Below, in pieces: positions 15,384-60,872 of a stretch of 64,000 bases of DNA. Position 1 is the stretch's first letter; every line of letters begins with the position of its first letter. The DNA is taken from IMG/VR virus record IMGVR_UViG_3300020188_000808, positions 124,001-188,000 of that record. One strand, given 5' to 3'. A program made the position numbers and the translations under genes. The notes under the pieces are model-generated. The model was not told the origin of the DNA and made no database searches. It worked only from the letters and a program-made list of their open reading frames with translations.

Positions 15384-15386
15384 ATA
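15380..15386 (+). promoter_or_regulatory. T4-late-like promoter ATAAATA
   Basis: ATAAATA (T4 late consensus TATAAATA) just upstream of the AGGA RBS of 15405; motif recurs before other structural genes. Confidence 0.55.
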
Positions 15387-15404
15387 CACTTGTAGGAAAT
15401 AATA

Positions 15405-16019: not shown

Positions 16020-16022
16020 TAA

Positions 16023-19864: not shown

Positions 19865-19867
19865 GAG

Positions 19868-19874
19868 ATAAATA
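19868..19874 (+). promoter_or_regulatory. T4-late-like promoter ATAAATA
   Basis: GATAAATA in a short intergenic gap, followed by GAGGA RBS and ATG at 19894. Confidence 0.6.
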
Positions 19875-19893
19875 GTAACATAGAGGAAAAGAA

Positions 19894-21384
19894 ATGGCAT
19901 ATACTATTGATAGATATAATGGAACTACTTTAACAGTTGTTGAAGATGGAACCGTAGATCAAACTAGTGATATTAAACTAGTTGGAAAAAATTACGCCGG
20001 TTACGGTGAGATTCAAAACGAAAACTTTTTACACTTATTAGAAAACTTTAGTGGTGCTAACCAACCTCCAAAGGCCATTTCAGGACAGGTTTGGTATGAC
20101 TCAGGTGCTAATAAACTAAAATTTTATGATGGATCTAAGTTTAGAACTACAGGCGGTGCTGAAGTAGCCGCAACTGCACCAGCTGGTTTAGCTACTGGCG
20201 ACTTATGGTGGGATTCAACAAACGAACAATTATATGCATATAGCGGTACAGGTTATGTACTAGTAGGACCACAAGGTGCAGGTACAACTGTTACACAGAT
20301 GGTTTCAGCAAACGTTAGAGATACAACTAACGTAAACAGATTAGTTATTAAGGCTGTTGTTAACGATGAAACAATTTATATTATTTCAGGTGCAACATTT
20401 ACTATTGACAGTACAGATCCACTTAATGCTATTACAGGATTTGATGTTGTTAAAAAGGGTTTAACACTAAGAAATACAACAAACGCAACAGGCGGTGTTA
20501 CAAGTACACAGGATTATTACTGGGGTACAGCAAGTAACTCATTAAAACTAGGTGGCTATAGTGCTACTGACTTTGCATTAGCAGGTTCAGGATCATTTAC
20601 ATCACTTGTTAGTTTTGCAGATGCAGGTATTTCAATTGGTAACTCAAGTGATTTAAAAATCTTTATTGAAAATGACAACGAAGGCGTTATTAAAAATGAC
20701 GTTGGAACAAAAATTAAACTTAAAGTTGATAACACAGGTGGAGTTGAACAGCATGTAGCGACTGTACAAGATACAGGTATTATGCCAGGGTCTACTAACA
20801 CATACTCAATTGGAGCAACAGGTGCTGTGTTTAGCGAAATGCATGCCACTAATTTTTATGGGTTAGCAGAAAATGCACAAAAAATGCAGGTTGGTGCAAA
20901 CTACCGTAGTGCAGATACAGCGGCAACTAACAATACAGTAGCAGTTAGAGATGCAAGTGGTAATTTAGTAGCAAATAAATTTACAGGTACAGCAACATCA
21001 GCAGAATATGCTGACTTGGCTGAGATTTACAAAACAGCAGAAGAACTACCAACAGGGACTATTGTTACTGTTCCAAAATTTGACGAAGAAACAGATGCAG
21101 AAGTAAGAGCTATTGAGCCAACTGAAATTCCAGTAGGTGTAATTAGTGCTAAACCAGCATTCTTAATGAACAGCGAAGCAGAAGGCCAAGCAGTTGCACT
21201 TAAAGGGCGTGTTCCAGTAAGAGTAAAAGGCATCATTAATAAAGGTGAAGCAATTTATGCAGACATGGACGGCGTTGGACATACTATTAGAGCCGAAGGG
21301 CATCAATTAGTAGGTATTGCGTTAGAGACATGGGAACCAGAAGCAGATGAAGAAGGCTTAGTAGAAGCTATTTTAAAGGTATAA
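19894..21384 (+). CDS. Tail fibre/appendage protein with C-terminal intramolecular-chaperone (peptidase G2-like autocleavage) domain
   Basis: Shared N-terminal module; C-terminal 'YADLAE...VGVIS..PAFLMN...VALKGRVPVRV' matches the IMC autoproteolytic domain pattern. Confidence 0.7.
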   Translation: MAYTIDRYNGTTLTVVEDGTVDQTSDIKLVGKNYAGYGEIQNENFLHLLENFSGANQPPKAISGQVWYDSGANKLKFYDGSKFRTTGGAEVAATAPAGLATGDLWWDSTNEQLYAYSGTGYVLVGPQGAGTTVTQMVSANVRDTTNVNRLVIKAVVNDETIYIISGATFTIDSTDPLNAITGFDVVKKGLTLRNTTNATGGVTSTQDYYWGTASNSLKLGGYSATDFALAGSGSFTSLVSFADAGISIGNSSDLKIFIENDNEGVIKNDVGTKIKLKVDNTGGVEQHVATVQDTGIMPGSTNTYSIGATGAVFSEMHATNFYGLAENAQKMQVGANYRSADTAATNNTVAVRDASGNLVANKFTGTATSAEYADLAEIYKTAEELPTGTIVTVPKFDEETDAEVRAIEPTEIPVGVISAKPAFLMNSEAEGQAVALKGRVPVRVKGIINKGEAIYADMDGVGHTIRAEGHQLVGIALETWEPEADEEGLVEAILKV

Positions 21385-21388
21385 GATT

Positions 21389-22282
21389 ATGGCAGTCGGC
21401 GATATTATTACAGCGGCAAGGTACAATAACTTACAATCAAGAGTTGCAACAGTAATGGGCGTAGGGTCAGGAGATGACGGATACGGACAAAACTTAAACA
21501 GTTCTCAAGTAGCAGTAGGAGCCAATGTTCAAGCAATTGATATTAATCAACTTTACCAAGATATGGCGGCTGGGCGTATTCATCAAACAGGTACTACTCC
21601 AACAGAAATTAATCTTGTAACACAGAATGTTGATTTAGTATTAGACAGTGATACAATTAATAAAAAAGGTGTAGTACAATTTGAAAATCTTGCTACAACA
21701 CTTGAAAATGATAAATTTGTAGCACACCCTAGTCAAACTACTGCGGAAGCGGCTATTGCAGGTACTAGAACTACTCAGTGGAACGGAACAATTTCACACA
21801 TTATTGACGTAACATTTATTGATGGAAATCATCAAAGACATTTTTTTAATGCAGGCGGAACAATACGTTTTGCGGCAAACATTACATATGTTGGAGCAAG
21901 TAGTAAAACAATTGACTGGATGACGATGTTAGTTAACATGGGTACAGTTAGCATGAATTATACATCAACAACAGCAACTGGATCAGGAAATGGTAGTGCA
22001 ATTGGTTATCATGATTTAGATGCTAGTTACCAACAAATTTTCCAAAAAGATGGTTCTGGATTATATGCCGCAAACGATTATAAAATTGAAGCAACCAAAG
22101 TAAGTGATACAGTTTTACGTTTTAGAGTTACATTTAACGATGATAACACAGGTAACCCAAACACAGACGAAAACGTTTTGGGTGTTGTAAACAGTACTAT
22201 TACACAATTAAGACCAACTGGTTCAGCAGTTTCATTGGTATCCCCTACATATAGCACAAACGGCAGTTCAAATCTAAATTAA
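21389..22282 (+). CDS. Putative virion structural protein
   Basis: 297 aa, T/N/S/G-rich, last gene of the structural run; no catalytic motif. Confidence 0.5.
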   Translation: MAVGDIITAARYNNLQSRVATVMGVGSGDDGYGQNLNSSQVAVGANVQAIDINQLYQDMAAGRIHQTGTTPTEINLVTQNVDLVLDSDTINKKGVVQFENLATTLENDKFVAHPSQTTAEAAIAGTRTTQWNGTISHIIDVTFIDGNHQRHFFNAGGTIRFAANITYVGASSKTIDWMTMLVNMGTVSMNYTSTTATGSGNGSAIGYHDLDASYQQIFQKDGSGLYAANDYKIEATKVSDTVLRFRVTFNDDNTGNPNTDENVLGVVNSTITQLRPTGSAVSLVSPTYSTNGSSNLN

Positions 22283-22285
22283 TCA

Positions 22286-22314
22286 TTGCTCTTTCTCTTT
22301 AAATAGTGTATAAT
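22286..22314 (+). promoter_or_regulatory. Sigma70-like promoter (TTGCTC-N17-TATAAT) with embedded late-like TAAATA
   Basis: -35 at 22286-22291 and -10 at 22309-22314 with 17-nt spacer; AGGAG RBS follows; palindrome TAGTGTA-taa-TACACTA (22304-22320) overlaps the -10. Confidence 0.6.
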
Positions 22315-22333
22315 ACACTAAAGGAGAATTACT

Positions 22334-22687
22334 GTGGATGAACGTCTTGAAAAAGCATTAGATTTTGCCAATTATATGACTACTCTTAACAACCAAAAAC
22401 GGGTGTTAAAAGAGAAGTTTTATGAAAGTGCAATACATTACCACAATGGTGGACAATTCTCCGTAAACAAAGACCTAATGAATTTTTGTAGTATGTTAGT
22501 AAACACAGGACAAGAGTCTGTAGTACTAATTGACGACAATGATATTCCTATTAAAGTTGCAGATGTTGAAACATTCTTAGGTGACATTTTAAATATCTAC
22601 TTTACAGCATCAAACGAGTACCTAACAGAATACGAAAAGATACGGAGCCTTCGAAAGGTCTCTGGGCTTGTAGAATATGAAGAATAA
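22334..22687 (+). CDS. Hypothetical protein (possibly fibre-assembly chaperone-like)
   Basis: GTG start with strong AGGAG RBS; 117 aa, helical; first gene of the island. Confidence 0.5.
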   Translation: MDERLEKALDFANYMTTLNNQKRVLKEKFYESAIHYHNGGQFSVNKDLMNFCSMLVNTGQESVVLIDDNDIPIKVADVETFLGDILNIYFTASNEYLTEYEKIRSLRKVSGLVEYEE

Positions 22688-23525
22688 AGGTGCATTAATA
22701 TTTGCTAGAAATAACGAACAAGTTGATTATCTTAAACAAGCATATTATCTAGCAAAGCGTATAAGCAAATATCTTAATTTACCAACAACTGTTGTAACAG
22801 ATAGTGTTGAATACTTAAAAGATACCTATGTCGATTATGATACAGTATTTGATAATGTAATCGAAGTCCCATATGCTCGCGGCGCCAGCGAAAAACGTTA
22901 CTATGACGGCTCGGGTGTATACAAACAACTATCATTTAAAAATGACTTGCGTACACAAGCCTATAAACTAACACCGTATGACGAAACAATAATGTTAGAC
23001 AGTGATTATATAATTGCAAATGATGTACTCAAACATTGTTTTACACAAGAACACAATTTCTTAATATATAAAGATGCAAAAGACCTAACAGGATTTAGAG
23101 ATACTACCGAGTTTCAAAAAATTAGTGAAACTAGTATTGATTTTTATTGGGCGACAGTTGTATATTTTAAAAAAAGCAAAGAAGTAGAAACATTTTTTAA
23201 TTTAACACAACATATACAAGATAACTGGCAACACTATAACAGTATATTTCAAATTAACAAACCAACGTTTCGTAATGATTGGGTGTTTAGTATTGCAATA
23301 CATATTATGAATGGTTATCAAGCAGGAGATTTTGCAAGTTCATTACCGGGTAAAAAATATTATACAGCAGATAGAGATATTTTGTGGGAATTAAAAGATG
23401 ACAACTTTTTATTTTTAGTAGAAAAAGAAGGACACCTTGGAGAATACACACCTTTGCGTATTAAAGGTAGTAGTGTTCACGTTATGAACAAGTTTAGTTT
23501 GAATAGGATCATAGACAATGACTAA
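22677..23525 (+). CDS. GT-A fold nucleotide-diphospho-sugar transferase
   Basis: 'TPYDETIMLDSD' DxD motif; paralog of the next gene. Confidence 0.7.
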   Translation: MKNKGALIFARNNEQVDYLKQAYYLAKRISKYLNLPTTVVTDSVEYLKDTYVDYDTVFDNVIEVPYARGASEKRYYDGSGVYKQLSFKNDLRTQAYKLTPYDETIMLDSDYIIANDVLKHCFTQEHNFLIYKDAKDLTGFRDTTEFQKISETSIDFYWATVVYFKKSKEVETFFNLTQHIQDNWQHYNSIFQINKPTFRNDWVFSIAIHIMNGYQAGDFASSLPGKKYYTADRDILWELKDDNFLFLVEKEGHLGEYTPLRIKGSSVHVMNKFSLNRIIDND

Positions 23526-24351
23526 AGGTATAGTCTTAATAGCACAAAACAGCGAATATAACTACGTAGAACAAGCGTGTGCGTTAGCTATGAGTATTAG
23601 AGCTACTAATGACACTAAAGTTTGTTTGTTAACCAACGATACAGTACCATCTAGGTATGTAGATCTGTTTGATGTTATTAAAGAAATACCGTGGGAAGAC
23701 GATTCCGCTAATATGGAATGGAAAGTAGCTAATCGTTGGAAGTTATATCATGCTAGTCCGTATGATGAAACTATTGTAATGGATACTGATATGCTTGTAT
23801 TACAAAATTTAGATTCATGGTGGAACTTTTTAAGCAACTATGAAGTGTTTTATACTAGCAAAGTATACACATATAGAGGTGACGAAGTTAACGACACTTA
23901 CTATCGTAAAACATATATTGCAAATAACTTACCAAACGTTTATGCAGGCTTTCATTATTTCAAAAAATGTGACTTTGCAAAAGAATTTTATACAATGTTA
24001 GAATTAGTAATGAACAACTGGCAATTATTTTATGGAAAATATGCAAGTAAAGAATATCAAAATTGGTTAAGCGTTGACACAAGCACAGCAATCGTTACAA
24101 AGATACTTGATTGTGAAGACAGAATTACAAATAAGAAAGTGTCATTTCCTAGTTTTACACATATGAAGCCTAGAATACAAGGATGGTATAATCCTAGTGA
24201 AACATGGCGTAGTAGAGTGGGTGCATATCTAACTGATGACCTACAATTAAAAATAGGCAATCATCAACAGCAAGGTATTTTTCATTATACTGAAAAAGAA
24301 TTTTTAGATCAGTCTAAAATACAAAAATACGAAAGGTATCTTAACGTATGA
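23518..24351 (+). CDS. GT-A fold nucleotide-diphospho-sugar transferase (GT8-like)
   Basis: 'SPYDETIVMDTDML' DxD; 'ALAMSIR' N-terminal helix; C-terminal 'FHY'. Confidence 0.75.
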   Translation: MTKGIVLIAQNSEYNYVEQACALAMSIRATNDTKVCLLTNDTVPSRYVDLFDVIKEIPWEDDSANMEWKVANRWKLYHASPYDETIVMDTDMLVLQNLDSWWNFLSNYEVFYTSKVYTYRGDEVNDTYYRKTYIANNLPNVYAGFHYFKKCDFAKEFYTMLELVMNNWQLFYGKYASKEYQNWLSVDTSTAIVTKILDCEDRITNKKVSFPSFTHMKPRIQGWYNPSETWRSRVGAYLTDDLQLKIGNHQQQGIFHYTEKEFLDQSKIQKYERYLNV

Positions 24352-24935
24352 TATTAACTGCGGAGTTGCCTAAACAAGAAAGATATGTAGTATTTGATCC
24401 TAATAACGGTGATGTGTTAGCAGTACCTAATTATAAACCAGATGGTAATTATATTCCTGTAGAGGAACACGAAGTTAAAGGATTAATTTCGGGACAAGAA
24501 CCGCTAAGTTATTATTATGTACATTACATCAAACATACTAAACAATATGAACTTAGACAGCGTTCAAATACTAGCATTGATAGTTATCTAGTAAATGATT
24601 TAATATACGAATTACCAATGACATCAGTTAATGAGCCAGACATTCATGTATTACAAAATATCAAAGACACATGTTGGAAGATTACTATTGGCGGAGATCT
24701 AAAAGCAAATATTTTAGCACAAAAAGTTAATTTTAAAAATACTATATCGTTTAGTGTTACTGAAAAAGACGATCCAAATATATTACTAAAAACATTAAGT
24801 TTTAGTTTTGCTGATTTATCAGACGTAAAATATGTAATACTTCCATTTGATAGCGATTTTGAATTTAAAGCAAAACCAGTTAGTGTGTATACAATTAAAA
24901 ACTTTGATAGATACTTATACGAGGTAATCAAATGA
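24348..24935 (+). CDS. Hypothetical protein
   Basis: 195-aa ORF translationally coupled (ATGA overlaps) on both sides. Confidence 0.6.
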   Translation: MILTAELPKQERYVVFDPNNGDVLAVPNYKPDGNYIPVEEHEVKGLISGQEPLSYYYVHYIKHTKQYELRQRSNTSIDSYLVNDLIYELPMTSVNEPDIHVLQNIKDTCWKITIGGDLKANILAQKVNFKNTISFSVTEKDDPNILLKTLSFSFADLSDVKYVILPFDSDFEFKAKPVSVYTIKNFDRYLYEVIK

Positions 24936-25816
24936 AAATAAACATTGCAGAGCAAGATATTATCTTTTTAAGTTATGACGAACCTAACTGTGAAAAGAAT
25001 TTTGTTGATTTAGTTAACAAGGTTCCGTGGGCAAAACGTGTACACGGTGTAGAAGGATCAGATGCCGCACACAAAGCCTGTGCTGAATTGAGCGAAACTA
25101 AACACTTTGTTACAGTAGACGGCGATACAATTATTGACCCAGAGTTTTTAAACGTAGTACTAGACTTAGACGAATTAAAAGTTGACGATGATTATCAATT
25201 TAGTTGGTGCGGACATATTAATGTTAACGGACTAAAATATGGTAATGGCAGTTTAAAAATGTGGACTAAAGACTTTGTAAAAAATATGCAAACGCATGAA
25301 AACACAGACGGTGAAGATGATACTAGTATTGAATTTTGTTACTTTGATAATTACTATCAATTAAATGACAACTATAGTACAAGTCTTATAAATGCAACTC
25401 CACATCAAGCCTGGAGAGCAGGGTTCCGTGAAGGAGTTAAGATGAGTTTGAATAGGGGTGCTAAAGTTAAAGACCTTGCAAACGATACTTGGTGGCAAAA
25501 TTATCAACGTTTGTTGATATGGATGCAGGTTGGTGCTGATGTAGACAATGGAATATGGAGTGTAATGGGAGCAAGACAAGGTTGTTACATGACAATGTGT
25601 ACAGATTGGGACTTTGTGCAAACAAGAGATTTTATATATCTTAATAAACTGTGGGAAGAAACAAAAAATAAAGATCCATTAGTATACAGCAAAGAATTAG
25701 GTCAAAGTCTTAGTAGCGAGTGCGGATTACCTATCTCATCTACACCCTTTGACGATGAACAAAGTCATTTTTTCAAACAAGTATACATTAACACGGACAG
25801 AGTTATTCGTAAATGA
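24932..25816 (+). CDS. GT-A fold glycosyltransferase (GT2-like)
   Basis: 'DIIFLSYDE...AHKACA...FVTVDGD' DxD; 'AWRAGFREGVK'; paralog of 32620. Confidence 0.7.
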   Translation: MKINIAEQDIIFLSYDEPNCEKNFVDLVNKVPWAKRVHGVEGSDAAHKACAELSETKHFVTVDGDTIIDPEFLNVVLDLDELKVDDDYQFSWCGHINVNGLKYGNGSLKMWTKDFVKNMQTHENTDGEDDTSIEFCYFDNYYQLNDNYSTSLINATPHQAWRAGFREGVKMSLNRGAKVKDLANDTWWQNYQRLLIWMQVGADVDNGIWSVMGARQGCYMTMCTDWDFVQTRDFIYLNKLWEETKNKDPLVYSKELGQSLSSECGLPISSTPFDDEQSHFFKQVYINTDRVIRK

Positions 25817-27186
25817 GTGAATTAGAAAAAATTAAAACACTAATGCCTAAAATTGAGGATGAAACCTCTCCAACATTCTGTTTAGCAAAATGGCATCACA
25901 CAACTATCTATCTTGCAACAGGAGAAACACATAGTTGTTATCATCCTGCTCCGCATAAAATTCCTTTAGAAGAATTAGAAGGCAATCCTAGTGCGTTACA
26001 TAATACTATTGAGAAAAAAGAACAGCGTAAACAAATGCTATGCGGAGATAAACCAGACGGTTGTAGTTACTGTTGGAAAATTGAAGCAATGGGTAAAGAC
26101 TTTGTAAGTGATAGACATATTAAAACTGCAAGTATATACACACCTGAAAGAGTAGCGGAAATAAAACAAAAAGGGGCGGATTTTAACGTAAATCCTGAGT
26201 ATATTGAAATTAGTTTTAGTAATGAATGCAATTTTAAGTGTGGATACTGTCACCCTAAAGCCTCTAGTAGGTATTGGAACGAAATAAAACAACATGGACC
26301 ATACGATATGTCAAGCACACATAGACAAGACATTGATTGGTTTGAAGTACAAAAAGACGAAGACACGAATCCATACGTAAAAGCGTTTTGGGAATGGTGG
26401 CCTGAACTTAGTAAGACACTAAACATTTTGCGTATTACAGGCGGCGAACCATTGATGCATAAAAGTTTTTGGAAACTGTTAGAAAAGTTAGATAACGATC
26501 CTAAGCCACACATACAAATTGAAGTAAACAGTAACATGGGTGTTAAGCCTAAGCTAGTTGAAAGACTAACTGAAACAGTTAAGCGTTTAAAAGCAGAAGG
26601 CAAGATTAAAAGTTTTAAATTGTACACTAGTATTGATACTTGGGGACCAAGAGCAGAATATGCACGTACCGGGTTAGACATTAAGTTATGGGAACAAAAC
26701 TTAGATTATTATCTAAGCAATACAAACTGGCCTGTAACATTTATGATTACGTTTAATATATTTGGTGTAACTAGTTTTACGCAACTATTAGAAAAAATAC
26801 TAGAGTGGCGTACAAAATACAATAGTGATGACAATGCTACTCAGTGGCAACGTATTAGATTTGATACACCTCATTTAAAAGAACCAAGCATATATGACAT
26901 GAACATTTTACCTAAAGAAGAATTTATGCCGTATATGGAAAAACACTTACAATTTATTAAAGATAACCAAGACGATACTAATCGTACTAAGTTTACAGGG
27001 TTAGAATACGAAAAGTTTAAACGTGTAGTAGAGTATATGCGTACAACACATTATGAACCACGTAAGCTAGAACAAGCACGTAGAGATTTTCATAACTGGT
27101 TCAAAGAATTTGATCGTAGACGTAACTGTAATTTGGTAGAAACTTTTCCAGAACTAGAAGGCTTTTATAATGACTGCGGAAAGTAA
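25813..27186 (+). CDS. Radical SAM protein with N-terminal twitch/SPASM-like domain
   Basis: CNFKCGYC (CX3CX2C) and ITGGEP; N-terminal C..W...SCYH...CSYCW Cys cluster. Confidence 0.9.
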   Translation: MSELEKIKTLMPKIEDETSPTFCLAKWHHTTIYLATGETHSCYHPAPHKIPLEELEGNPSALHNTIEKKEQRKQMLCGDKPDGCSYCWKIEAMGKDFVSDRHIKTASIYTPERVAEIKQKGADFNVNPEYIEISFSNECNFKCGYCHPKASSRYWNEIKQHGPYDMSSTHRQDIDWFEVQKDEDTNPYVKAFWEWWPELSKTLNILRITGGEPLMHKSFWKLLEKLDNDPKPHIQIEVNSNMGVKPKLVERLTETVKRLKAEGKIKSFKLYTSIDTWGPRAEYARTGLDIKLWEQNLDYYLSNTNWPVTFMITFNIFGVTSFTQLLEKILEWRTKYNSDDNATQWQRIRFDTPHLKEPSIYDMNILPKEEFMPYMEKHLQFIKDNQDDTNRTKFTGLEYEKFKRVVEYMRTTHYEPRKLEQARRDFHNWFKEFDRRRNCNLVETFPELEGFYNDCGK

Positions 27187-28363
27187 TACATTTTGCATAC
27201 TTCCGTGGATTCATTTCTATGCTAATCCAGACGGCAATGTACTTCCTTGTTGTATAGGTGATTGGCGTCAACCTCTTGGCAACACACGTAAAAACACTAT
27301 TAAAGAAATATGGAATAGTGAAGAATATAAAAAATTAAGACTTGCATTATTAAACAATGAAAAGCCTAGTGCTTGTACACAATGTTGGAAACACGAAGAA
27401 GCAGGAATAGAAAGCAATAGAATTGCACAAAATAATAGATTTGCACAGCATATTAGTATAAAAGACGAAACCAATTTTGACGGTTCGTTAGATATAATGA
27501 AGTTACTATACTTTGATGTACGTTGGAGCAACATTTGTAATTTTAAATGCAGAACCTGTAGTAGTACTTACAGTTCTACATGGGCTGTAGAAGATAACAA
27601 GCAAGGTGAAAATAAACCTGTATACATTTTTGCAGGCGGAGATAACAACGATAATTTGTTTGAACAGTTTAAGCCGTACCTTAAAGGTATTCAAGATTAT
27701 TATTTTGCAGGTGGCGAGCCTCTTATTACAGATAAGCATTATGATATTTTAGATTATTTAATTGAAAATAAAAAGACTGATGCTGTACTGCAATACAACA
27801 GTAATTTAAGTAATTTATTTTTTAAGAAGAAAAGTATTACAGAGTATTGGAATAATTTTAAACACGTTGAAGTACGTGCAAGTATTGACGGCTATGGAAA
27901 CAGAGGCGAGTATATTAGAGAAGGTACTGATTGGCCAACTATAGAACAAAACTTAAAAATTATTAAAAAAGAAAGTCCGCATGTAATTATTAGTTTTAAT
28001 TGTGTAGTAAGTGCATTTAATGTATTAACACTTGTAGACTTTTTAGAATATATGTCTAGCAAAGGATTTGATGTAAACAACAGTACGCTTTATAATATTG
28101 TTGAACCTAATTACTACAGTTTTAATGCACTAACAGATGAACAAAGACAAACTGCAATAGATAAGTTACAAGCATACGCAAATACAGTAACACATACAGA
28201 ACATTTAAGATATGTAAATGGTGTTATTGATTACTTGCACAAGTCAACATTTGATCAAAGTGCAAATGATTTGTTTAAATCTAACAATATGTACTTTGAT
28301 AAAATTCGTAATCGTTCTTTTAACGAAACGTTTCCTGAACTTATTGATGTATTAACGGATTAA
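27170..28363 (+). CDS. Radical SAM protein with N-terminal twitch/SPASM-like domain
   Basis: CNFKCRTC, FAGGEP, SIDG; N-terminal CILPW..DGNVLPCC...CTQC. Confidence 0.9.
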   Translation: MTAESNTFCILPWIHFYANPDGNVLPCCIGDWRQPLGNTRKNTIKEIWNSEEYKKLRLALLNNEKPSACTQCWKHEEAGIESNRIAQNNRFAQHISIKDETNFDGSLDIMKLLYFDVRWSNICNFKCRTCSSTYSSTWAVEDNKQGENKPVYIFAGGDNNDNLFEQFKPYLKGIQDYYFAGGEPLITDKHYDILDYLIENKKTDAVLQYNSNLSNLFFKKKSITEYWNNFKHVEVRASIDGYGNRGEYIREGTDWPTIEQNLKIIKKESPHVIISFNCVVSAFNVLTLVDFLEYMSSKGFDVNNSTLYNIVEPNYYSFNALTDEQRQTAIDKLQAYANTVTHTEHLRYVNGVIDYLHKSTFDQSANDLFKSNNMYFDKIRNRSFNETFPELIDVLTD

Positions 28364-29207
28364 TTTGTGTATTAGGACGCATAATAGTTTCGTACTTTAA
28401 CATATCTAACCAACGCGGTTTCATACTATATAAACTAAATGCACCCTCTTGACTTAGAACAGCACTTTGCATCAACTTAATCCATTTAGTTTGTGCGGCA
28501 CCGACTGCTTTGTCAGTAGATTCCTTCCAGTCGTGTTTAAATGTATGTTTTAGATAATCGTAATGTTCAAGTGGACTAGGATGCCCGTCTTGAAATCCTT
28601 TGTGGACTAGTCCTTTATCTTTCACAGTCTTTGCCTGTAAATCGTTGTTCCATAGTGTGTGATAAAAACTAGGAAGAATTGCATCTAAACATTCGTGATA
28701 TAATCCAGCAAGTGTTTCAAGATTTATATTTTTCTTTGATGTCAACTCCCATTGATTTGGAAATTCAAAATCTAACATCTTAATCATGTGATGTTGTGTG
28801 CGATGCTTTAATAACTGATGAGCACTTTTAATTAGTGCAAAATCTCTAACATATGACCCATACTCACTAAAATAATTTTCTAAAAAATGCTGATCATACT
28901 CTCCTTGAGAAAATATATTACCTGGAACTAACCAACCATCTTTTTCAGGTAAAAATCTATCTTCACGACATACATTAGTCCATTGCACAATAACTAAATC
29001 ATTATGATCAAATGTGTACACATTATCAGCCTGCATAATCATATTATGTATATACTGATTACCTGCACCACTGCGACCAAAATTTCTAAACTCTGCATCA
29101 GGAAATTCTACACCTAAAATGTTAGCCCATGTACCCCATTGATATCCTGTAAAGCTACAACCAAATGTGAATATTCTTTGAGGTGTGTTATGAATTAGTT
29201 TTTTCAT
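28341..29207 (-). CDS. SGNH/GDSL-fold hydrolase or acyltransferase-like protein
   Basis: Block I FGCSFT, block II GRSGAGN, C-terminal DGHP. Confidence 0.6.
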   Translation of the reverse strand: MKKLIHNTPQRIFTFGCSFTGYQWGTWANILGVEFPDAEFRNFGRSGAGNQYIHNMIMQADNVYTFDHNDLVIVQWTNVCREDRFLPEKDGWLVPGNIFSQGEYDQHFLENYFSEYGSYVRDFALIKSAHQLLKHRTQHHMIKMLDFEFPNQWELTSKKNINLETLAGLYHECLDAILPSFYHTLWNNDLQAKTVKDKGLVHKGFQDGHPSPLEHYDYLKHTFKHDWKESTDKAVGAAQTKWIKLMQSAVLSQEGAFSLYSMKPRWLDMLKYETIMRPNTQINPLIHQ

Positions 29208-30471
29208 CTTTTTTCTCTTTCATGTATTTAATCAAATTTGTCATAACACTTTTAGTATGTTCTTCTTCAATCATAGTTTTAAGATTATGTGCCGAAATAT
29301 CTGCAACTCTCCATTTCCAATGGAGTTGTTTCTTTATTGGTAGTGCTGATAATACGTTTACCTGTCTAGATAATTCTTTTTTAAGTTTAGTCCAGCGTTT
29401 ATATGTATCACGTTCGTTATCAAAACTATAATCAAATACACCGTCATATAGTTTATAGCCATAGTCTTGTAATTTCTGATTAGCTTGGTGTTGTCCAAAT
29501 ATAATAAATGGTTGTAAGTGATATATACTTCTAAATGTTTTTTCACTCCAAAATAAACTAGTGCCATTCCAATTTTCAGCAAACGTTTCATTTACTACTT
29601 GAAACAAAGTTTGTTGATGCAAGTAACTACTCAGACTCATAGCATGATTAGTTACAAAATCAGGAGTGTCTACAACTAAAGGAAGTGCATGTTTATTCCA
29701 TGCTTTGATTTCAGTTTTAGATATGTTACATCCAACGGGCATTTGATAGCTTTGCCAATGTTTTAATGTTTGTTTTTCAAATTTATTATGACTTACCATA
29801 CCATGATAAATTAAATCACTATTAAAAATTTCAAATGCACTCACAGTACGATGAGGTCTATTAACACGACTTAGACTTAAAAATATTTTTCCTTTGTATC
29901 GTTGTTCAGCTTCATATTTTTCTTCTTTTAGACGAGTTGCTACAAAGTCGTCAACATTTCTATTTTCAATATGTTGAGTTACATTATTGCCAATTCCCTG
30001 AGCTCCTGCAATACCAAATATCATACTTTCAAAATTATTAAACGTAACAACTTTAATTGAATTTGTAATATTATTTTCCATGTTATAACGAATAATATTA
30101 TCTTGGTCGTACATGTTTGAACTAAAGAAAATAATCTTTTCAGGATCAATCCTTGCTTGATTACAACTATAGTATAAAACATCAAAAAACGGTACATCAT
30201 GTATGGTACTAAATCCTTCAGTACTAGCATCAAAGAAAAAGAAACATTTTGGATCTTTACGTAACTGTTTTTGCCAAGTGTGTTTGATAAATTGAAATAT
30301 ATTAGTTTCTTTGTGCCACTTAGGATACTTAATTAACGAGTGTACAATAGACACGTCACTAAAGTCTGTCTCGCTTCGTCCTAGTTGTTCGATTAATTTT
30401 TGAATAGATAGCGTAGTTCTTGGTTGCTGAATAAATTCATTACGAATGATCGAGTCTTTAATTAACTTCAT
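29188..30471 (-). CDS. Hypothetical protein, possible GT-B-type glycosyltransferase
   Basis: 'LSRVNRPHR...VVNET...WSEKTFRSI..LQPFIIFG' resembles the sugar-nucleotide-binding C-terminus of fucosyltransferase-like phage proteins. Confidence 0.45.
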   Translation of the reverse strand: MKLIKDSIIRNEFIQQPRTTLSIQKLIEQLGRSETDFSDVSIVHSLIKYPKWHKETNIFQFIKHTWQKQLRKDPKCFFFFDASTEGFSTIHDVPFFDVLYYSCNQARIDPEKIIFFSSNMYDQDNIIRYNMENNITNSIKVVTFNNFESMIFGIAGAQGIGNNVTQHIENRNVDDFVATRLKEEKYEAEQRYKGKIFLSLSRVNRPHRTVSAFEIFNSDLIYHGMVSHNKFEKQTLKHWQSYQMPVGCNISKTEIKAWNKHALPLVVDTPDFVTNHAMSLSSYLHQQTLFQVVNETFAENWNGTSLFWSEKTFRSIYHLQPFIIFGQHQANQKLQDYGYKLYDGVFDYSFDNERDTYKRWTKLKKELSRQVNVLSALPIKKQLHWKWRVADISAHNLKTMIEEEHTKSVMTNLIKYMKEKKDEKTNS

Positions 30472-30485
30472 AAGGGTAACTTTCC

Positions 30486-30506
30486 ATAAATACTACTGTA
30501 TTTATA
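30486..30506. promoter_or_regulatory. Bidirectional late promoter pair (ATAAATA on +, TATAAATA on -) forming an inverted repeat
   Basis: ATAAATAC-TACT-GTATTTAT in the only gap between divergent operons; the minus-strand copy is the exact T4 late consensus. Confidence 0.65.
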
Positions 30507-30532
30507 TGCGTATATAATGATTGGAGAACATA

Positions 30533-31705
30533 GTGAAGATTGGATTTATTGGGTTAGGAAAATTAGGATTACCTTGTGCAGAAGTCATTTCAACCAAAGG
30601 GCATGATGTAACAGGTTATGATGTTACTACTGTTAAAAGTGATAGCGTAACTGTTTGTCCTACAATTAAAGATACTGTTCAAAATAGAGACATTGTATTT
30701 GTTGCAGTACCTACTCCCCATCATCCAGACTATGACGGCAAAAAACCCACAGCTCACTTAGAACCCAAAGACTTTGGTTATGATATTGTACTTGATGTAT
30801 TGCGTGAAGCAAATGCACATATGAACAACAATCAATTGCTTGTGTTAATTAGTACAGTATTACCAGGCACAGTACGCCGAGAATTTTATCCGTTAGTAAC
30901 TAATACTAGATTTGTTTATAACCCGTATCTTATTGCAATGGGAACAGTAGCATGGGATATGGTAAATCCTGAAATGGTTATGATTGGTACAGATGACGGA
31001 AGTGAAACTGGAGATGCAAAACAACTTGTAGATTTTTATAAAACTATAATGGAAAATGATCCACGCTATGAAATTGGCACTTGGGACGAATGTGAATGTA
31101 TCAAAGTATTTTATAATACATTTATCAGTGCAAAAATTGGATTGGTTAATATGATACAAGATGTTGCAGAGAAACAAGGACATATTAATGTTGATGTAGT
31201 AACTAATGCACTTGCCAAAAGCGATCAGCGTATAATGGGTCCAAGTTATATGAAAGCAGGAATGGGCGACGGAGGAGCGTGTCATCCAAGAGATAATATA
31301 GCTCTACGCTACATGGCTCAAAACTTGGGGTTGCAATATGACATATTCGATGCTATAATGAATGCAAGAGAAGTGCAGGCTAAAAATATGGCAAACTATT
31401 TGGTAAAAATTGCACAAGAGCGTAATCTACCAATTTTGCTAAATGGCATTGCATATAAACCAGGAGTACCATATACTGATGGCAGTTATTCGTTACTAGT
31501 TGGACACTACTGTAAAGAGTTAGGATATCATTGCATAGAAGTTGATCCGTTAGCAAGTCCGCAACGTGGTCCTTTTAGTGCAGTAGTACTATTAGCACAT
31601 CCTGAACTTTATTGCTTTTTAAATAAAGAAAGTGTTGTAGTTGATCCGTGGAGAGAATATAAGTCAGAAGAGGTAGAAGTATTCCATTATGGAAACACAC
31701 GATGA
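30533..31705 (+). CDS. ugd: UDP-glucose/GDP-mannose dehydrogenase family protein
   Basis: Rossmann GLGKLG, VAVPTP, ISTVLPGT, catalytic GGACHPRD, AYKP. GTG start at 30533 has a GGAG RBS (ORF track starts 30521). Confidence 0.85.
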   Translation: MKIGFIGLGKLGLPCAEVISTKGHDVTGYDVTTVKSDSVTVCPTIKDTVQNRDIVFVAVPTPHHPDYDGKKPTAHLEPKDFGYDIVLDVLREANAHMNNNQLLVLISTVLPGTVRREFYPLVTNTRFVYNPYLIAMGTVAWDMVNPEMVMIGTDDGSETGDAKQLVDFYKTIMENDPRYEIGTWDECECIKVFYNTFISAKIGLVNMIQDVAEKQGHINVDVVTNALAKSDQRIMGPSYMKAGMGDGGACHPRDNIALRYMAQNLGLQYDIFDAIMNAREVQAKNMANYLVKIAQERNLPILLNGIAYKPGVPYTDGSYSLLVGHYCKELGYHCIEVDPLASPQRGPFSAVVLLAHPELYCFLNKESVVVDPWREYKSEEVEVFHYGNTR

Positions 31706-32619
31706 AAAAAATATTAATTGTAGGGGATAGTAATGCACTAGGCGAGTGGGGTACAATTATTCCAGGACCTGCTTGTGCAAACAACGATCATCCAGAATTA
31801 TTTAGACCCTACAATAAAGAACAATATCTTCACGGAGCTCATCCTAAAGGATTTCAAGTTGTATGGCCAGGCTTTGGTTATAACTTAGGTCAAAAAGGTC
31901 ATGCTTGTGCTGATTATGGAGTCGGCGGTGGTTCTAATTTTGAATCATTGTTTAAAGTTGAAGAAGCACTTGGACTTGCACCTTGTTTTACTAGTCCAGC
32001 ATTTTACAATCCAGATGTTATTGTATGGGTAGTAACAGAACCATGTAGAGATCTTGGAGATTCTAAATGGCCTCCAGAAGCAGGATTGTACGACCTTGAA
32101 AAATATTACAAGCAACGTGATAGTGCAATTAAAGATGCAAAAAGTATTAAAGAATTAAACGACATCTTGCTAAAACTTGCAATGGATGGCGCTCAACGTA
32201 TATATGATGAAACTAATATCCCGTGGATAATAATTGAAGGTTGGAGTAAAGTAGATACTACAAACTATACCTTCGCAAAACATGTAGTAAAAGATTGGAT
32301 GTCAACACTACTAGGACATGATATACCTTTGTTAAGTAGTTGGCCAACTGTAAATCATTTACGCCGACGTCGACCAGATTTAACAGAAGATGCAGGCGAC
32401 AGTCTACGGTTGTTTGCTAGAGAAAAACCAGAATTAGGTATTCCTAAAATACCCGAGGGAGAAAAAACAGAATTTACATCTATTGTAGATGACTACGAAA
32501 AAACAATTAAGACTATGCAACAGCATGATAAGTTTCCTGATAATTGCCATCCGGACAGAACTGTACATGCAGAATTAGCTGAGTACCTTGAACCAATAAT
32601 TAACGGATTACAAAAATAA
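31702..32619 (+). CDS. SGNH/GDSL-fold hydrolase or acyltransferase-like protein
   Basis: IVGDSN block I, GVGGGSN block II, C-terminal DNCHP (DxxH). Confidence 0.6.
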   Translation: MKKILIVGDSNALGEWGTIIPGPACANNDHPELFRPYNKEQYLHGAHPKGFQVVWPGFGYNLGQKGHACADYGVGGGSNFESLFKVEEALGLAPCFTSPAFYNPDVIVWVVTEPCRDLGDSKWPPEAGLYDLEKYYKQRDSAIKDAKSIKELNDILLKLAMDGAQRIYDETNIPWIIIEGWSKVDTTNYTFAKHVVKDWMSTLLGHDIPLLSSWPTVNHLRRRRPDLTEDAGDSLRLFAREKPELGIPKIPEGEKTEFTSIVDDYEKTIKTMQQHDKFPDNCHPDRTVHAELAEYLEPIINGLQK

Positions 32620-33294
32620 ATGTATGATATTGTTTTTATAAGTTATGGTGAAGCAAACGCTGATAGTAATTGGGATAAACTTAAACAACAATACCCAATG
32701 GCAAAGCGTGTTAAAGATGTTAAAGGAATTCACCAAGCACACGTAGCAGGTGCTAAAAAATGTTTTACAAAAATGTTTTGGGTTGTAGATGGTGATGCTC
32801 AGATAGTAGACGATTTTAAATTTGATCACGAAGTTAGTAGTTACGATTTAGATTGTGTTCATGTGTGGAGAGCAAGAAATCCTGTTAACGGATTAGAGTA
32901 TGGATACGGTGGGGTTAAGTTATTACCACGTATGCTTACACTAAAGATGGATACTACAACAAATGATATGACTACTAGTATTAGTAATAAATTTAAAGCA
33001 ATGCCAACTGTAAGTAATATTACAGCATTTAACACAGATCCATTGAGTACATGGCGCGGCGCATTTAGAGAATGTGCAAAGTTGGCAAGTAAAACAATAC
33101 AAGGACAACTAGAGGAAGAAACAAATGATAGACTTAAAACTTGGACTACTCATGCTGATGGAATACATAGTGGATATGCGTTACGAGGTGCTAATGCTGG
33201 TATGCAGTTTGGCCTTCGTGTCGGCGCTGATTTGGGGTTAATAAATAATTTTGAATGGTTAGGAGAGCAGTTTGCAAAAGATTCCGTTTACTAA
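32620..33294 (+). CDS. GT-A fold glycosyltransferase (paralog of 24932)
   Basis: 'DIVFISYGE...AKRV..VKGIHQAH...WVVDGD...NGLEYGYGGVKL...WRGAFRECAK'. Confidence 0.7.
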   Translation: MYDIVFISYGEANADSNWDKLKQQYPMAKRVKDVKGIHQAHVAGAKKCFTKMFWVVDGDAQIVDDFKFDHEVSSYDLDCVHVWRARNPVNGLEYGYGGVKLLPRMLTLKMDTTTNDMTTSISNKFKAMPTVSNITAFNTDPLSTWRGAFRECAKLASKTIQGQLEEETNDRLKTWTTHADGIHSGYALRGANAGMQFGLRVGADLGLINNFEWLGEQFAKDSVY

Positions 33295-60813: not shown

Positions 60814-60841
60814 GTGCCTATTCCTTATTGTTTATACTTAC

Positions 60842-60870: not shown

Positions 60871-60872
60871 CC

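What the first reader, a model, noticed from the sequence alone, without database searches (positions are those of the whole stretch)
22677..33294. Two paralogous glycosyltransferase pairs directly downstream of the fibre genes
22677 and 23518 share KG.x.I.A.N.E..Y..QA..LA..I and PYDETIxxDxD. 24932 and 32620 share DIxFxSYxExN, AKRV, VDGD, NGLxYGxG and WRxxFRE. None has a TM segment or signal peptide, so they act in the cytoplasm, where virions assemble. They are the first enzymes after the structural genes. Inference: sequential assembly of an oligosaccharide on virion proteins, forming a conserved core of the island to which the rSAM/oxygenase modules add variable decorations.
Basis: partly seen in the sequence, partly recalled or inferred. 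Interest (0 to 1): 0.6.

Follow-up and report, generated by a model that had tools for sequence, protein, structure and literature searches.

The report
Four-glycosyltransferase cassette behind jumbo-phage fibres
An uncultured salt-marsh jumbo phage carries four soluble sugar-adding enzymes (two old duplicate pairs) fixed directly behind its tail-fibre genes, an arrangement kept in every relative examined and in the culturable Ralstonia phage RsoM2USA; they probably put a glycan on a phage protein, but what they modify has not been shown.

Summary
The ORFs at 22677/23518 and at 24932/32620 are two real paralogous pairs (BLASTP E 1e-10 and 2e-18), every quoted motif is present, and none has a membrane segment.

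Pair 1 is a divergent GT8-like retaining GT-A glycosyltransferase. Its profile hits glycogenin at E 8e-5, the fold match is Z 14.7 over the whole model, and DxD plus a C-terminal His are conserved. Pair 2 is an unclassified GT-A, GT2-like family with no Pfam or NCBIfam hit. Its N-terminal domain matches glycosyltransferases at Z 9-10, its DxD is conserved, and in bacteria it is fused to GT2 and GT-B domains.

The order fibres–g117–GT8a–GT8b–(small ORF)–GTAa was found in 61 of 61 related viral loci and in RsoM2USA. GTAb lies downstream in 28 of 30 loci, either 6-12 bp away or after a 1-9 kb variable insert. Both duplications predate the split between RsoM2USA and the aquatic clade.

The substrate, virion proteins, is inferred only. 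Modification of a host surface glycan and synthesis of a glycosylated peptide remain open; DNA glycosylation is unlikely. I rate this a new variant of a known kind, of moderate interest. It is testable because RsoM2USA can be grown.

The parts
16023..22282 (+). Four tail-fibre / tail-collar genes (676, 603, 496 and 297 aa) immediately upstream. They are candidate acceptors.
   Evidence: Pfam Collar domain; PHROG tail fibre, tail collar and tail protein families. Homologues lie upstream of the cassette in 52 of 52 related loci with enough flank.
22334..22687 (+). g117: a conserved 117-aa protein of unknown function that always precedes GT8a. It overlaps GT8a by 11 nt.
   Evidence: Present upstream in 61 of 61 loci and in RsoM2USA gene 354. 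No Pfam or PHROG family.
22677..23525 (+). GT8a: GT8-like (retaining-type) GT-A glycosyltransferase, pair 1 member a.
   Evidence: Paralogue of GT8b. Matches the A1 profile at E 1.6e-67. D108, D110 and H268 are at least 97% conserved in 70 orthologues of 34-91% identity. Forms its own clade, support 100/100, which includes the RsoM2USA orthologue.
23518..24351 (+). GT8b: GT8-like GT-A glycosyltransferase, pair 1 member b.
   Evidence: Profile vs PDB: glycogenin-1, E 8e-5. AF2 model pLDDT 92.6. Foldseek: glycogenin, GT8, AgtA, UGGT at E about 1e-8. VIA: Z 14.7, 209 aligned residues, rmsd 3.9, residues 1-277. D89, D91 and H256 conserved.
24348..24935 (+). g195: a fast-evolving 195-aa protein in a conserved slot between the two GT families. 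Function unknown.
   Evidence: Recognisable in only 20 of the loci, at 24-86% identity. RsoM2USA gene 351 occupies the same slot. No family hit above threshold.
24932..25816 (+). GTAa: unclassified GT-A (GT2-like) glycosyltransferase with a C-terminal helical domain, pair 2 member a.
   Evidence: No Pfam, NCBIfam or PHROG hit. AF2 pLDDT 94. Foldseek PDB top hit is PBCV-1 A64R, followed by SunS, TarP, RmlT. VIA: Z 9.9 to B4GALNT1 and WrtF over residues 1-155. BFVD hits are almost all glycosyltransferases, including one from Che8. D63 and D65 conserved. Fused to GT2 or GT-B domains in bacteria.
25813..28363 (+). Two radical SAM enzymes with an N-terminal twitch domain (457 and 397 aa). They are the first part of the variable insert between GTAa and GTAb.
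   Evidence: NCBIfam NF033640: E 4e-98 and 9e-116. Pfam Radical_SAM and SPASM. Present in only some relatives.
28341..29207 (-). 288-aa protein, possibly SGNH-like (motifs only).
   Evidence: N-terminal GCSFT and C-terminal DGHP read from the sequence. No family hit. Seen in 5 close relatives only.
29188..30471 (-). 427-aa protein of unknown function, with a weak lead to GT10 fucosyltransferases.
   Evidence: Atlas nearest named clusters are PF00852, score 0.78, a lead only. E295, T296 and S309-F313 are invariant in 6 orthologues. PDB profile search was empty.
30521..31705 (+). Nucleotide-sugar dehydrogenase (UDP-glucose/GDP-mannose dehydrogenase family). Would supply an oxidised sugar donor.
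   Evidence: Pfam UDPG_MGDP_dh central domain E 5e-18 and N domain E 1.6e-17, both above cut-off. TIGR03026 E 7.7e-47, 160 bits, below its 189.8 cut-off.
31702..32619 (+). 305-aa protein with an SGNH-hydrolase signature. Candidate glycan esterase or acyltransferase.
   Evidence: G8-D9-S10-N11, G75-G76, N79, D280 and H283 are invariant in 10 homologues of 50-67% identity. No Pfam or PDB sequence hit.
32620..33294 (+). GTAb: shorter paralogue of GTAa (224 aa), pair 2 member b. Closes the variable slot.
   Evidence: BLASTP vs GTAa E 2e-18. A2 profile E 8.5e-67. D57 and D59 conserved. Downstream of GTAa in 28 of 30 loci. RsoM2USA gene 348 is 45% identical.

Best explanation
The four genes encode soluble, metal-dependent GT-A glycosyltransferases of two kinds. 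Two are GT8-like enzymes, which in that family retain the anomeric configuration. Two belong to an unclassified GT2-like family. Each pair arose by an old tandem duplication.

The genes lie at the 3' end of the tail-fibre gene block, tightly packed on the same strand. The model I favour is that, in the cytoplasm, the enzymes each add a different sugar from nucleotide-sugar donors to a phage-encoded acceptor. The most likely acceptors are one or more of the fibre proteins or the 4,937-aa giant virion protein.

The slot between GTAa and GTAb, and the region after GTAb, hold lineage-variable tailoring genes. In this phage these are two N-twitch radical SAM enzymes, a nucleotide-sugar dehydrogenase, SGNH-like proteins and a possible fifth GT. 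They would vary the donor sugars or the finished glycan.

Shown: paralogy, fold, conserved catalytic motifs, solubility, gene order and its conservation. Inferred: late co-expression with the fibre genes, catalytic activity, sequential action, the identity of the acceptor, and any role in host range, stability or shielding.
For: Enzyme identity, pair 1:
- Glycogenin by profile, E 8e-5.
- The ten best VIA matches are GT8 or GT8-like enzymes, Z 13.5-14.7, covering residues 1-277.

Enzyme identity, pair 2:
- GT-A N-terminal domain, Z 9-10, with glycosyltransferases on top.
- The viral structure library returns almost only glycosyltransferases.
- Family members are fused to a Pfam-positive GT2 domain in a Bdellovibrionales chromosome, behind two further GT2 genes, and to GT-B domains in proteins of about 730 aa.

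Catalytic competence: DxD is at least 97% conserved in all four across orthologues down to 28-44% identity.

Linkage to fibres:
- 61 of 61 loci keep g117-GT8a-GT8b directly upstream of GTAa, and 52 of 52 have fibre homologues upstream.
- The same order is found in RsoM2USA genes 354-348.
- The genes overlap, and no terminator-like site lies between the fibre genes and the GTs.

A phage-encoded rather than host acceptor: the core is conserved between a soil Ralstonia phage and aquatic phages whose fibres are only 33-50% identical. This argues for a conserved acceptor.

A protein or peptide acceptor is plausible for pair 2. A GT-B fusion sits next to a C39-peptidase ABC exporter, an outer-membrane efflux protein and a transglutaminase. 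Another member carries Sel1 repeats. Structural hits include the peptide S-glycosyltransferases SunS and ThuS and the capsid-glycosylating A64R.

Donor supply: a nucleotide-sugar dehydrogenase lies in the slot.

The upstream giant-protein homologue (ORF361), ORF359 and ORF356 of RsoM2USA were identified in purified virions by mass spectrometry (PMC8504454).
Against: - No glycan has been seen on any virion of this lineage, and no enzyme assay exists.
- Neither pair reaches a Pfam glycosyltransferase model.
- For pair 2, nucleotidyltransferases score only about 1 Z unit below glycosyltransferases.
- Gene order beside fibre genes equally fits receptor-masking enzymes.
- The fibres show no obvious acceptor tract beyond ordinary Thr/Ser/Asn richness.
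- The 80 viral loci were chosen as the closest relatives of GTAa, so they represent one lineage and are not independent samples.
- Presence in metatranscriptome libraries may be DNA carry-over.
- Among 50,697 cultured phage genomes only RsoM2USA has the cassette, although 93 share the neighbouring baseplate-associated gene. The cassette is therefore not needed for this virion architecture.
Confidence: 0.5

Rival explanations
1. The enzymes modify a host envelope glycan (LPS core, O-antigen or capsule) from the cytoplasmic side during the long infection. This would mask the phage's own receptor, giving superinfection exclusion or stopping progeny from sticking to debris. Linkage to the fibre genes would then reflect co-evolution of the receptor-binding and receptor-masking functions.
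For: - Bacterial GT8 enzymes are typically soluble or peripheral LPS-core transferases. LgtC is among the best structural matches (Z 13.7), and WbbM and TarP/RmlT-type cell-wall GTs also appear.
- Bacterial members of pair 2's family sit in clusters with other GT2 genes.
- From my own knowledge, not a tool result: receptor-blocking genes are known to lie beside receptor-binding genes in other phages.
- RsoM2USA has a 270-min latent period (PMC8504454).
Against: - Host surface glycans differ greatly between hosts. Yet the four-GT core is kept from a Ralstonia phage to aquatic phages with much-diverged fibres.
- No membrane anchor, flippase or lipid-carrier-linked gene was seen in the block.
- The genes are packed with the tail-fibre genes on the same strand and none was seen among other gene classes.
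Confidence: 0.2
2. Together with the many radical SAM, Asp/Asn-hydroxylase-like and halogenase genes downstream, the GTs belong to a pathway that makes a glycosylated peptide or small molecule (glycocin- or RiPP-like, or a modified sugar metabolite). On this reading nothing is attached to the virion.
For: - One bacterial pair-2 fusion lies beside a C39-peptidase ABC exporter and an outer-membrane efflux protein, the typical export set for leader-peptide bacteriocins.
- Structural hits include the glycocin enzymes SunS and ThuS.
- The island holds at least 10 radical SAM/SPASM genes, at least 6 cupin hydroxylases and a tryptophan-halogenase-like enzyme.
Against: - No precursor-peptide gene, leader peptidase or exporter was recognised in the window.
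- The GT core is conserved even in relatives where few or no radical SAM genes follow within 10 kb, for example L045, L046, L052, L053.
- The cassette is fixed to the fibre genes in every locus.
Confidence: 0.15
3. The enzymes glycosylate phage DNA (hypermodified bases) to evade restriction.
For: DNA glycosylation is the best-known role of phage glycosyltransferases. It is cited as an option for the core GTs of aquatic jumbo "moraphages" (PMC12619734).
Against: - All four have a GT-A fold, and no phage DNA glucosyltransferase appears in any of the structure-match lists shown. That the T4 enzymes have the GT-B fold is from my own knowledge.
- No thymidylate-synthase-type (hydroxymethylase) gene was found in the 267.8-kb contig, although the contig is only about 75% complete.
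- The genes are embedded in the tail-fibre block rather than among replication or nucleotide genes.
Confidence: 0.05
4. Pair 2 proteins are sugar-phosphate nucleotidyltransferases that make activated sugars, and do not transfer sugars themselves. Only pair 1 would then transfer sugars.
For: IspD, MobA, HddC and RmlA-type nucleotidyltransferases score Z 7.3-8.8 on the same residues 1-155 and appear in the Foldseek list.
Against: - Glycosyltransferases rank first in all three structure searches.
- The family has a conserved DxD after a beta strand. Its first strand is followed by SYDEPN, resembling the GT2 pattern and lacking the Gly-rich loop of nucleotidyltransferases. The motif reading is from the sequence and from my own knowledge.
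- There are sub-threshold Pfam GT2 hits in two distant members.
- The domain is fused to other GT domains.
Confidence: 0.08

Closest known systems
Mycobacteriophage virion glycosylation (Che8-type; Freeman et al. 2023, as cited in PMC12619734)
   Same: Phage-encoded soluble glycosyltransferases are thought to act on the phage's own structural proteins in the cytoplasm. A Che8 glycosyltransferase is among the structural matches of GTAa (E 1.7e-4).
   Different: - There the glycans were demonstrated, on the C-termini of capsid and tail-tube subunits. Here nothing is demonstrated.
- The hosts here are Gram-negative (Ralstonia) or unknown aquatic bacteria.
- The cassette has four GTs of two unclassified families, sits behind the fibre genes, and encloses a variable slot.
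- I could not read the primary paper, which is not held.
Chlorovirus PBCV-1 capsid glycosylation enzymes (A64R and partners)
   Same: Virus-encoded, cytoplasmic, membrane-free GT-A enzymes build a glycan on a virion protein. A64R is the top Foldseek PDB match of GTAa (E 1.4e-4) and matches GT8b at Z 11.9.
   Different: PBCV-1 is a eukaryotic virus. Sequence identity is 9-14% and TM-scores about 0.3-0.4, so this is fold-level similarity only. The acceptor there is the major capsid protein, and nothing there concerns fibres.
CAZy GT8 retaining glycosyltransferases (glycogenin, LgtC, GlyE, AgtA)
   Same: Whole-domain GT-A fold match, Z 13.6-14.7. Profile hit to glycogenin across the nucleotide-binding half and the DxD. 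Conserved DxD and a C-terminal His.
   Different: No match to Pfam PF01501, even at E 1-10. Identity is 12-18%. Donor, acceptor and stereochemistry are untested.
GT2-type GT-A enzymes acting on peptides or cell-wall polymers (SunS/ThuS, TarP, RmlT, SpsA)
   Same: GT-A N-terminal domain with DxD, followed by a helical C-terminal domain.
   Different: No hit to Pfam PF00535 for the window proteins. The family has its own strongly conserved motifs (NGLxYGNGG.K.W and AWRAGFREGVK) that I cannot map to known GT2 motifs.
Core glycosyltransferase orthogroups of aquatic jumbo 'moraphages' (PMC12619734)
   Same: The paper reports four separate core orthogroups, called putative glycosyltransferases by BLASTp and HHpred, in a lineage of large aquatic phages, with function left open.
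   Different: I could not test whether those are the same four families or the same lineage. This contig has a ClpA-like gene but no lysyl-tRNA synthetase, two of the moraphage core markers, and it is incomplete. The paper does not describe linkage to fibres, paralogy or the variable slot.

Membership tests
GT8 (Pfam PF01501 / CAZy GT8), for pair 1 | Match to the family's sequence model above its cut-off | tested here: not met
   hmmscan at E<=10 found nothing for either protein. A PF01501 search of the whole contig at E<=1 hit two other loci but not these.
GT8 (Pfam PF01501 / CAZy GT8), for pair 1 | GT-A fold with GT8 members as nearest structures over the whole domain | tested here: met
   VIA: Z 14.7 (glycogenin), 14.6 (GlyE), 13.7 (LgtC; GT8 protein 3tzt), residues 1-277. 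Foldseek E about 1e-8. Profile vs glycogenin E 8e-5.
GT8 (Pfam PF01501 / CAZy GT8), for pair 1 | DxD metal/nucleotide-sugar motif | tested here: met
   D89/D91 (GT8b) aligns to the glycogenin DxD in the HMMER alignment. D108/D110 (GT8a) and D89/D91 are at least 97% conserved in 70-72 orthologues.
GT8 (Pfam PF01501 / CAZy GT8), for pair 1 | C-terminal His as third metal ligand | tested here: inconclusive
   H256 (GT8b) and H268 (GT8a) are invariant across both paralogues. I did not obtain a residue-level superposition to show they are equivalent to the glycogenin His.
GT8 (Pfam PF01501 / CAZy GT8), for pair 1 | Retaining transfer from a UDP-sugar | not testable with these tools
   Needs an enzyme assay and product stereochemistry.
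GT2-type GT-A (Pfam PF00535), for pair 2 | Match to the family's sequence model above its cut-off | tested here: not met
   No hit at E<=10. Only sub-threshold hits in two distant family members: 19.5 and 17.4 bits against a cut-off of 23.3.
GT2-type GT-A (Pfam PF00535), for pair 2 | GT-A (nucleotide-diphospho-sugar transferase) fold | tested here: met
   Residues 1-155: Z 9.9 (B4GALNT1, WrtF), 9.4 (STIV A197), 8.9 (GnT I, SpsA). Foldseek PDB and BFVD lists are dominated by glycosyltransferases. Scores are moderate, and nucleotidyltransferases follow within about 1 Z.
GT2-type GT-A (Pfam PF00535), for pair 2 | DxD motif after a beta strand | tested here: met
   D63/D65 (GTAa) and D57/D59 (GTAb) are at least 97% conserved in 82 sequences and at least 90% in 48 representatives of 28-86% identity.
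Virus-encoded virion-glycosylation systems (mycobacteriophage, chlorovirus) | Soluble virus-encoded glycosyltransferases genetically linked to structural genes | tested here: met
   No membrane segments. The cassette abuts the fibre genes in 52 of 52 loci and in RsoM2USA.
Virus-encoded virion-glycosylation systems (mycobacteriophage, chlorovirus) | Glycan covalently attached to virion proteins and dependent on the viral GTs | not testable with these tools
   Needs glycoproteomics of purified virions. The RsoM2USA virion mass spectrometry published so far identified proteins only.
Phage DNA glucosyltransferases (T4 alpha/beta-GT type) | GT-B fold / similarity to the DNA-modifying enzymes | tested here: not met
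   Both models are single-domain GT-A. No DNA glucosyltransferase appears in the lists shown by the four structure searches against the PDB.
Phage DNA glucosyltransferases (T4 alpha/beta-GT type) | Companion pathway making hydroxymethyl-pyrimidines (thymidylate-synthase-like enzyme) | tested here: inconclusive
   No PF00303 match in the 267,783-bp contig, but the contig is estimated to be only 75% complete.

The most novel reading that the evidence does not exclude
The four GTs are the fixed scaffold of a phage-encoded "fibre-decoration factory". A conserved core glycan would be laid on the receptor-binding fibres or the giant virion protein. A recombination-prone slot bracketed by the GTAa/GTAb paralogues, plus the downstream island, would swap in radical SAM, SGNH, dehydrogenase, hydroxylase and halogenase modules. 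Related phages would then display different chemically exotic glycans or protein modifications on otherwise similar fibres. This would be a post-translational route to diversifying host range or evading defences that has not been described for tailed phages.
Probability: 0.25. Interest if true: 0.8.

Novelty: new variant of a known kind. Interest (0 to 1): 0.55.

Why it matters
Virion glycosylation by phage enzymes has so far been shown for mycobacteriophages (and for chloroviruses among eukaryotic viruses).

If this cassette glycosylates fibres, the phenomenon would extend to jumbo myoviruses of Gram-negative and aquatic bacteria. The GTAa family has more than 7,900 homologues in metagenomes and 585 or more loci in IMG/VR, although the full four-GT arrangement was examined only in the 80 closest loci and RsoM2USA. 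It would also link glycosylation to the receptor-binding apparatus.

The finding gives a function-level annotation to two protein families that currently have none in Pfam, NCBIfam or PHROGs.

It also identifies a culturable model, Ralstonia phage RsoM2USA genes 354-348, all annotated "hypothetical", in which the question can be settled. That phage is being considered for biocontrol, so surface glycans that affect stability or host recognition would have practical relevance.

Tried and rejected
- Megablast of 22000-34000 against 50,697 phage genomes: no match.
- Single-sequence searches of Pfam (to E 10), NCBIfam, PHROGs and PDB sequences for the four proteins: essentially nothing. The only results were PHROG 1903 of unknown function for GT8b and chance-level PDB hits for GTAa.
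- The A2 profile against PDB sequences gave only a weak GmaR hit (E 0.067). I do not use it as evidence.
- Promoter and terminator scan of 15000-34500: counts at chance level, so no statement on transcription units beyond gene packing.
- Reads: six salt-marsh metatranscriptome libraries hold 21000-26900, and two have single contigs of 14-18 kb across it. These are assembled contigs, and DNA carry-over cannot be excluded, so I do not claim expression.
I make no claim of binding.
- Profile searches of PDB sequences for the 427-aa and 305-aa proteins of the slot: empty or chance level. The GT10 and SGNH readings remain motif-level leads.
- BLASTP of the 288-aa against the 305-aa protein: not significant.
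- RsoM2USA gene 347 was first tried as a pair-2 homologue and rejected on alignment. The true GTAb orthologue is gene 348.
- Moraphage membership could not be decided.
- The Freeman et al. paper is not held.
- In the pair-2 tree, two rows labelled GTAb (L029, L071) fall inside the GTAa clade. My collection script picked GTAa itself where no GTAb lay within the flank. This is a labelling artefact and no biology follows from it. That tree is also the quick version only.
- No alternative genetic code was used.

Full report
**Where the window lies.** The window is bases 124001-188000 of a 267,783-bp linear IMG/VR viral contig, estimated to be 75% complete. GC content is about 33%. Near-identical DNA is held by many salt-marsh metagenomes. 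The left part of the window is a virion module:
- the end of a baseplate-wedge gene;
- a 4,937-aa ORF (570-15383);
- a 204-aa protein whose homologues occur in 93 cultured jumbo myoviruses of the Rak2/121Q/Atu_ph07/XacN1 kind;
- four genes with tail-collar or tail-fibre signatures at 16023-22282.

**The observation.** Pair 1 (22677-23525 and 23518-24351) aligns at E 1e-10 with 24% identity. Pair 2 (24932-25816 and 32620-33294) aligns at E 2e-18 with 28% identity. All quoted motifs are present in both members of each pair, and none of the proteins has a hydrophobic stretch near the level of a membrane helix. Each family has exactly two copies in the contig. The genes from 22334 to 28363 overlap one another by 4-17 nt.

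**What pair 1 is.** Single-sequence searches found no family.
- A profile of 36 homologues hits glycogenin-1 and -2 at E 8e-5 to 5e-3. The match runs from the first strand through the DxD, with the phage DTD aligned on glycogenin's DAD.
- The AlphaFold model is confident (pLDDT 92.6).
- Foldseek puts glycogenin, a GT8 protein, the Skp1 galactosyltransferase AgtA, WbbM, LARGE1, UGGT and GlyE on top at E about 1e-8.
- The Foldseek-independent aligner gives Z 14.7-13.5 for ten GT8 or GT8-like enzymes over residues 1-277, with other GT-A families below.
- DxD and a C-terminal His are conserved in both paralogues in about 70 orthologues each, down to 34-36% identity.

Pair 1 is therefore a divergent GT8-like enzyme. 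It does not reach Pfam's GT8 model, so I do not file it as a member on sequence criteria.

**What pair 2 is.** It has no Pfam, NCBIfam or PHROG match at any threshold tried. The family is nevertheless large: more than 7,900 homologues in the 90% clusters, on contigs up to 356 kb and including Tara samples, and 1,197 representatives at 50% identity.
- The model is confident (pLDDT 94). It has an alpha/beta domain (residues 1 to about 155) and a helical C-terminal domain.
- Foldseek's best PDB hit is the PBCV-1 glycosyltransferase A64R. It is followed by TarP, RmlT, the peptide S-glycosyltransferases SunS and ThuS, and hyaluronan synthase, all at E about 1e-4 with low TM-scores.
- The wide structural search gives Z 9.9-8.9 for B4GALNT1, WrtF, CHSY3, a Leptospira GT, STIV A197, GnT I and SpsA. 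Nucleotidyltransferases follow closely at Z 8.8-7.3. Fold alone does not separate the two superfamily branches.
- Four things favour a transferase: (i) the viral structure library returns almost only glycosyltransferases after two family members; (ii) a conserved DxD; (iii) sub-threshold GT2 hits in distant members; (iv) domain fusions.

The domain fusions are as follows. Proteins of about 730 aa carry an N-terminal GT-B domain (EryCIII_C, GT28_C, UDPGT) in front of the family domain. A Bdellovibrionales chromosome encodes a GT2 + family-domain protein directly after two GT2 genes. The protein-atlas neighbours are named "Glycosyltransferase 2-like".

**Conservation and gene order.** I fetched the 80 IMG/VR loci most similar to GTAa (54-98% identity) and mapped all window proteins on them, and on RsoM2USA, by tblastn.

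| Test | Result |
|---|---|
| g117-GT8a-GT8b directly upstream of GTAa, loci with enough upstream sequence | 61 of 61 |
| Fibre homologues further upstream | 52 of 52 |
| GTAb downstream, loci with at least 9 kb downstream | 28 of 30 |
| GTAb 6-12 bp after GTAa | 13 loci |
| GTAb 1.0-8.9 kb after GTAa | 15 loci |

Where GTAb is distant, the space is filled by differing sets of radical SAM genes, the dehydrogenase and others. In the window the insert is 6.8 kb.

Among cultured phages only RsoM2USA (343.8 kb) has these families. It has the same order in genes 354-348, all annotated as hypothetical.

Trees put GT8a and GT8b in two clades with 100/100 support, each containing its RsoM2USA orthologue. 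GTAa and GTAb likewise form two clades, in the quick tree with SH-aLRT 100. Both duplications are therefore older than the split between the soil phage and the aquatic clade. All four copies have kept their DxD since.

Between GTAa and GTAb lie:
- two radical SAM enzymes of the N-terminal-twitch subfamily NF033640;
- a 288-aa protein and a 427-aa protein on the other strand;
- a nucleotide-sugar dehydrogenase;
- a 305-aa protein whose homologues keep GDSN, GG..N and D..H invariant, the SGNH signature.

The 427-aa protein has only a weak lead to GT10 fucosyltransferases.

**How it most likely works.**
- Shown: four soluble GT-A-type proteins with conserved catalytic motifs, packed at the end of the fibre gene block, conserved as a set.
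- Inferred: they are made late together with the fibres, and each adds a sugar to a phage-encoded acceptor, most likely a fibre or the giant virion protein. The GT8-like pair would give retaining linkages and the GT2-like pair probably inverting ones. The variable slot would supply or alter sugars.

The best argument for a phage-encoded acceptor is that the core is unchanged between phages of very different habitats with strongly diverged fibres. Host surface glycans would not be expected to stay constant over that range.

Support for a protein or peptide acceptor is circumstantial. One bacterial pair-2 fusion sits next to a C39-peptidase ABC exporter, an outer-membrane efflux protein and a transglutaminase. 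Another member carries Sel1 repeats beside a sulfotransferase and a GT-B gene. In RsoM2USA the homologue of the giant protein and two neighbouring gene products were found in virions (PMC8504454).

**Rivals.**
- Receptor masking on the host envelope fits the GT8 precedent (LgtC) and the linkage to fibres. It fits the cross-habitat conservation less well.
- A glycosylated peptide or metabolite pathway fits the surrounding radical SAM, hydroxylase and halogenase island and the exporter context in bacteria. However, no precursor or exporter was recognised here, and the GT core persists where few such genes follow.
- DNA glycosylation is unlikely. The fold is GT-A, no hydroxymethylase-type gene was found, and the genes are embedded in the tail-fibre block.
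- That pair 2 makes activated sugars without transferring them is not excluded by fold, but the motifs and fusions argue against it.

**Comparison with what is known.** The closest functional analogues are mycobacteriophage virion glycosylation and chlorovirus capsid glycosylation. The closest enzyme families are GT8 and GT2-type GT-A. A 2025 survey of aquatic jumbo "moraphages" reported four core putative glycosyltransferase orthogroups and left their role open (PMC12619734). I could not establish whether those are these families.

To my knowledge, and in the papers searched here, the following are not described: the recognition of two ancient paralogue pairs, their fixed position behind the fibre genes, the variable slot bracketed by GTAa and GTAb, and the presence of the cassette in a culturable phage.

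**Verdict.** The enzyme assignment and the conserved-core claim are supported. The substrate and the "decoration" claim are plausible but unproven. This is a new variant of a known kind and of moderate interest. Its value lies mainly in being directly testable in RsoM2USA.

Noticed in passing
window 570-15383 (+): A single 4,937-aa ORF between the baseplate-wedge gene and the fibre genes. It has FG-GAP repeats, a weak CBM5/12 hit and only 6 cysteines. Its RsoM2USA homologue (ORF361, >288 kDa) was identified in virions by mass spectrometry.
   Followed up: partly
window 33272-55302: An unusually dense enzyme island: at least 10 radical SAM genes in the window (several of the N-terminal-twitch subfamily NF033640, others with C-terminal SPASM), six Asp/Asn beta-hydroxylase-like cupins, and a tryptophan-halogenase-like flavoenzyme at 54142-55302 (E 2.6e-72). 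The content differs between related loci.
   Followed up: partly
window 25816-32620, and loci L006-L085: GTAa and GTAb bracket a variable slot. In 13 of 28 relatives they are 6-12 bp apart. In the others they are 1-8.9 kb apart with different gene sets between them. This looks like an insertion hot spot between tandem paralogues.
   Followed up: yes
window 56495-57868 (-): A 457-aa protein with an N-terminal Mtd_N domain (major tropism determinant of Bordetella phage BPP-1, E 1.6e-11). It may mark a further receptor-binding protein or a target of a diversity-generating retroelement. No reverse transcriptase was looked for.
   Followed up: no
window 59545-62068 (-): A DUF2201 metallopeptidase/VWA-like protein next to an ATPase (PHROG 1297, E 4e-102), a pair unrelated to the finding.
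   Followed up: no
window 29188-30471 (-): A 427-aa protein with a weak protein-atlas lead to GT10 fucosyltransferases (score 0.78) and an invariant ET...SEKTF stretch in six orthologues. It is possibly a fifth glycosyltransferase, but a PDB profile search found nothing.
   Followed up: partly
window 31702-32619 (+) and 28341-29207 (-): The 305-aa protein keeps GDSN, GG..N and D..H invariant in 10 homologues (SGNH hydrolase signature). The 288-aa protein has similar end motifs (GCSFT, DGHP) but no significant similarity to it.
   Followed up: partly
G000:C1:30599-31129 (-) and 254116-254259 (-), outside the window: Two further loci of the same phage contig match Pfam GT8 (PF01501) at or near its cut-off, so the phage has additional, more conventional GT8-type genes elsewhere.
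   Followed up: no
window 21000-26900: This stretch is held at 90-98% of sampled words by six salt-marsh metatranscriptome libraries. In two of them it lies in single contigs of 14-18 kb with only 4-6 base differences. That fits an abundant, possibly actively infecting phage, but DNA carry-over is not excluded.
   Followed up: partly
locus L091 (PBPT01000016.1, 335,231 bp) and other MAG contigs: Several contigs binned as bacterial MAGs (Neomarinimicrobiota, Rickettsiales, Flavobacteriales, 'Bifidobacterium') carry 53-60% identical GTAa homologues. One is a 335-kb contig. These look like jumbo-phage contigs mis-binned into bacterial genomes.
   Followed up: no
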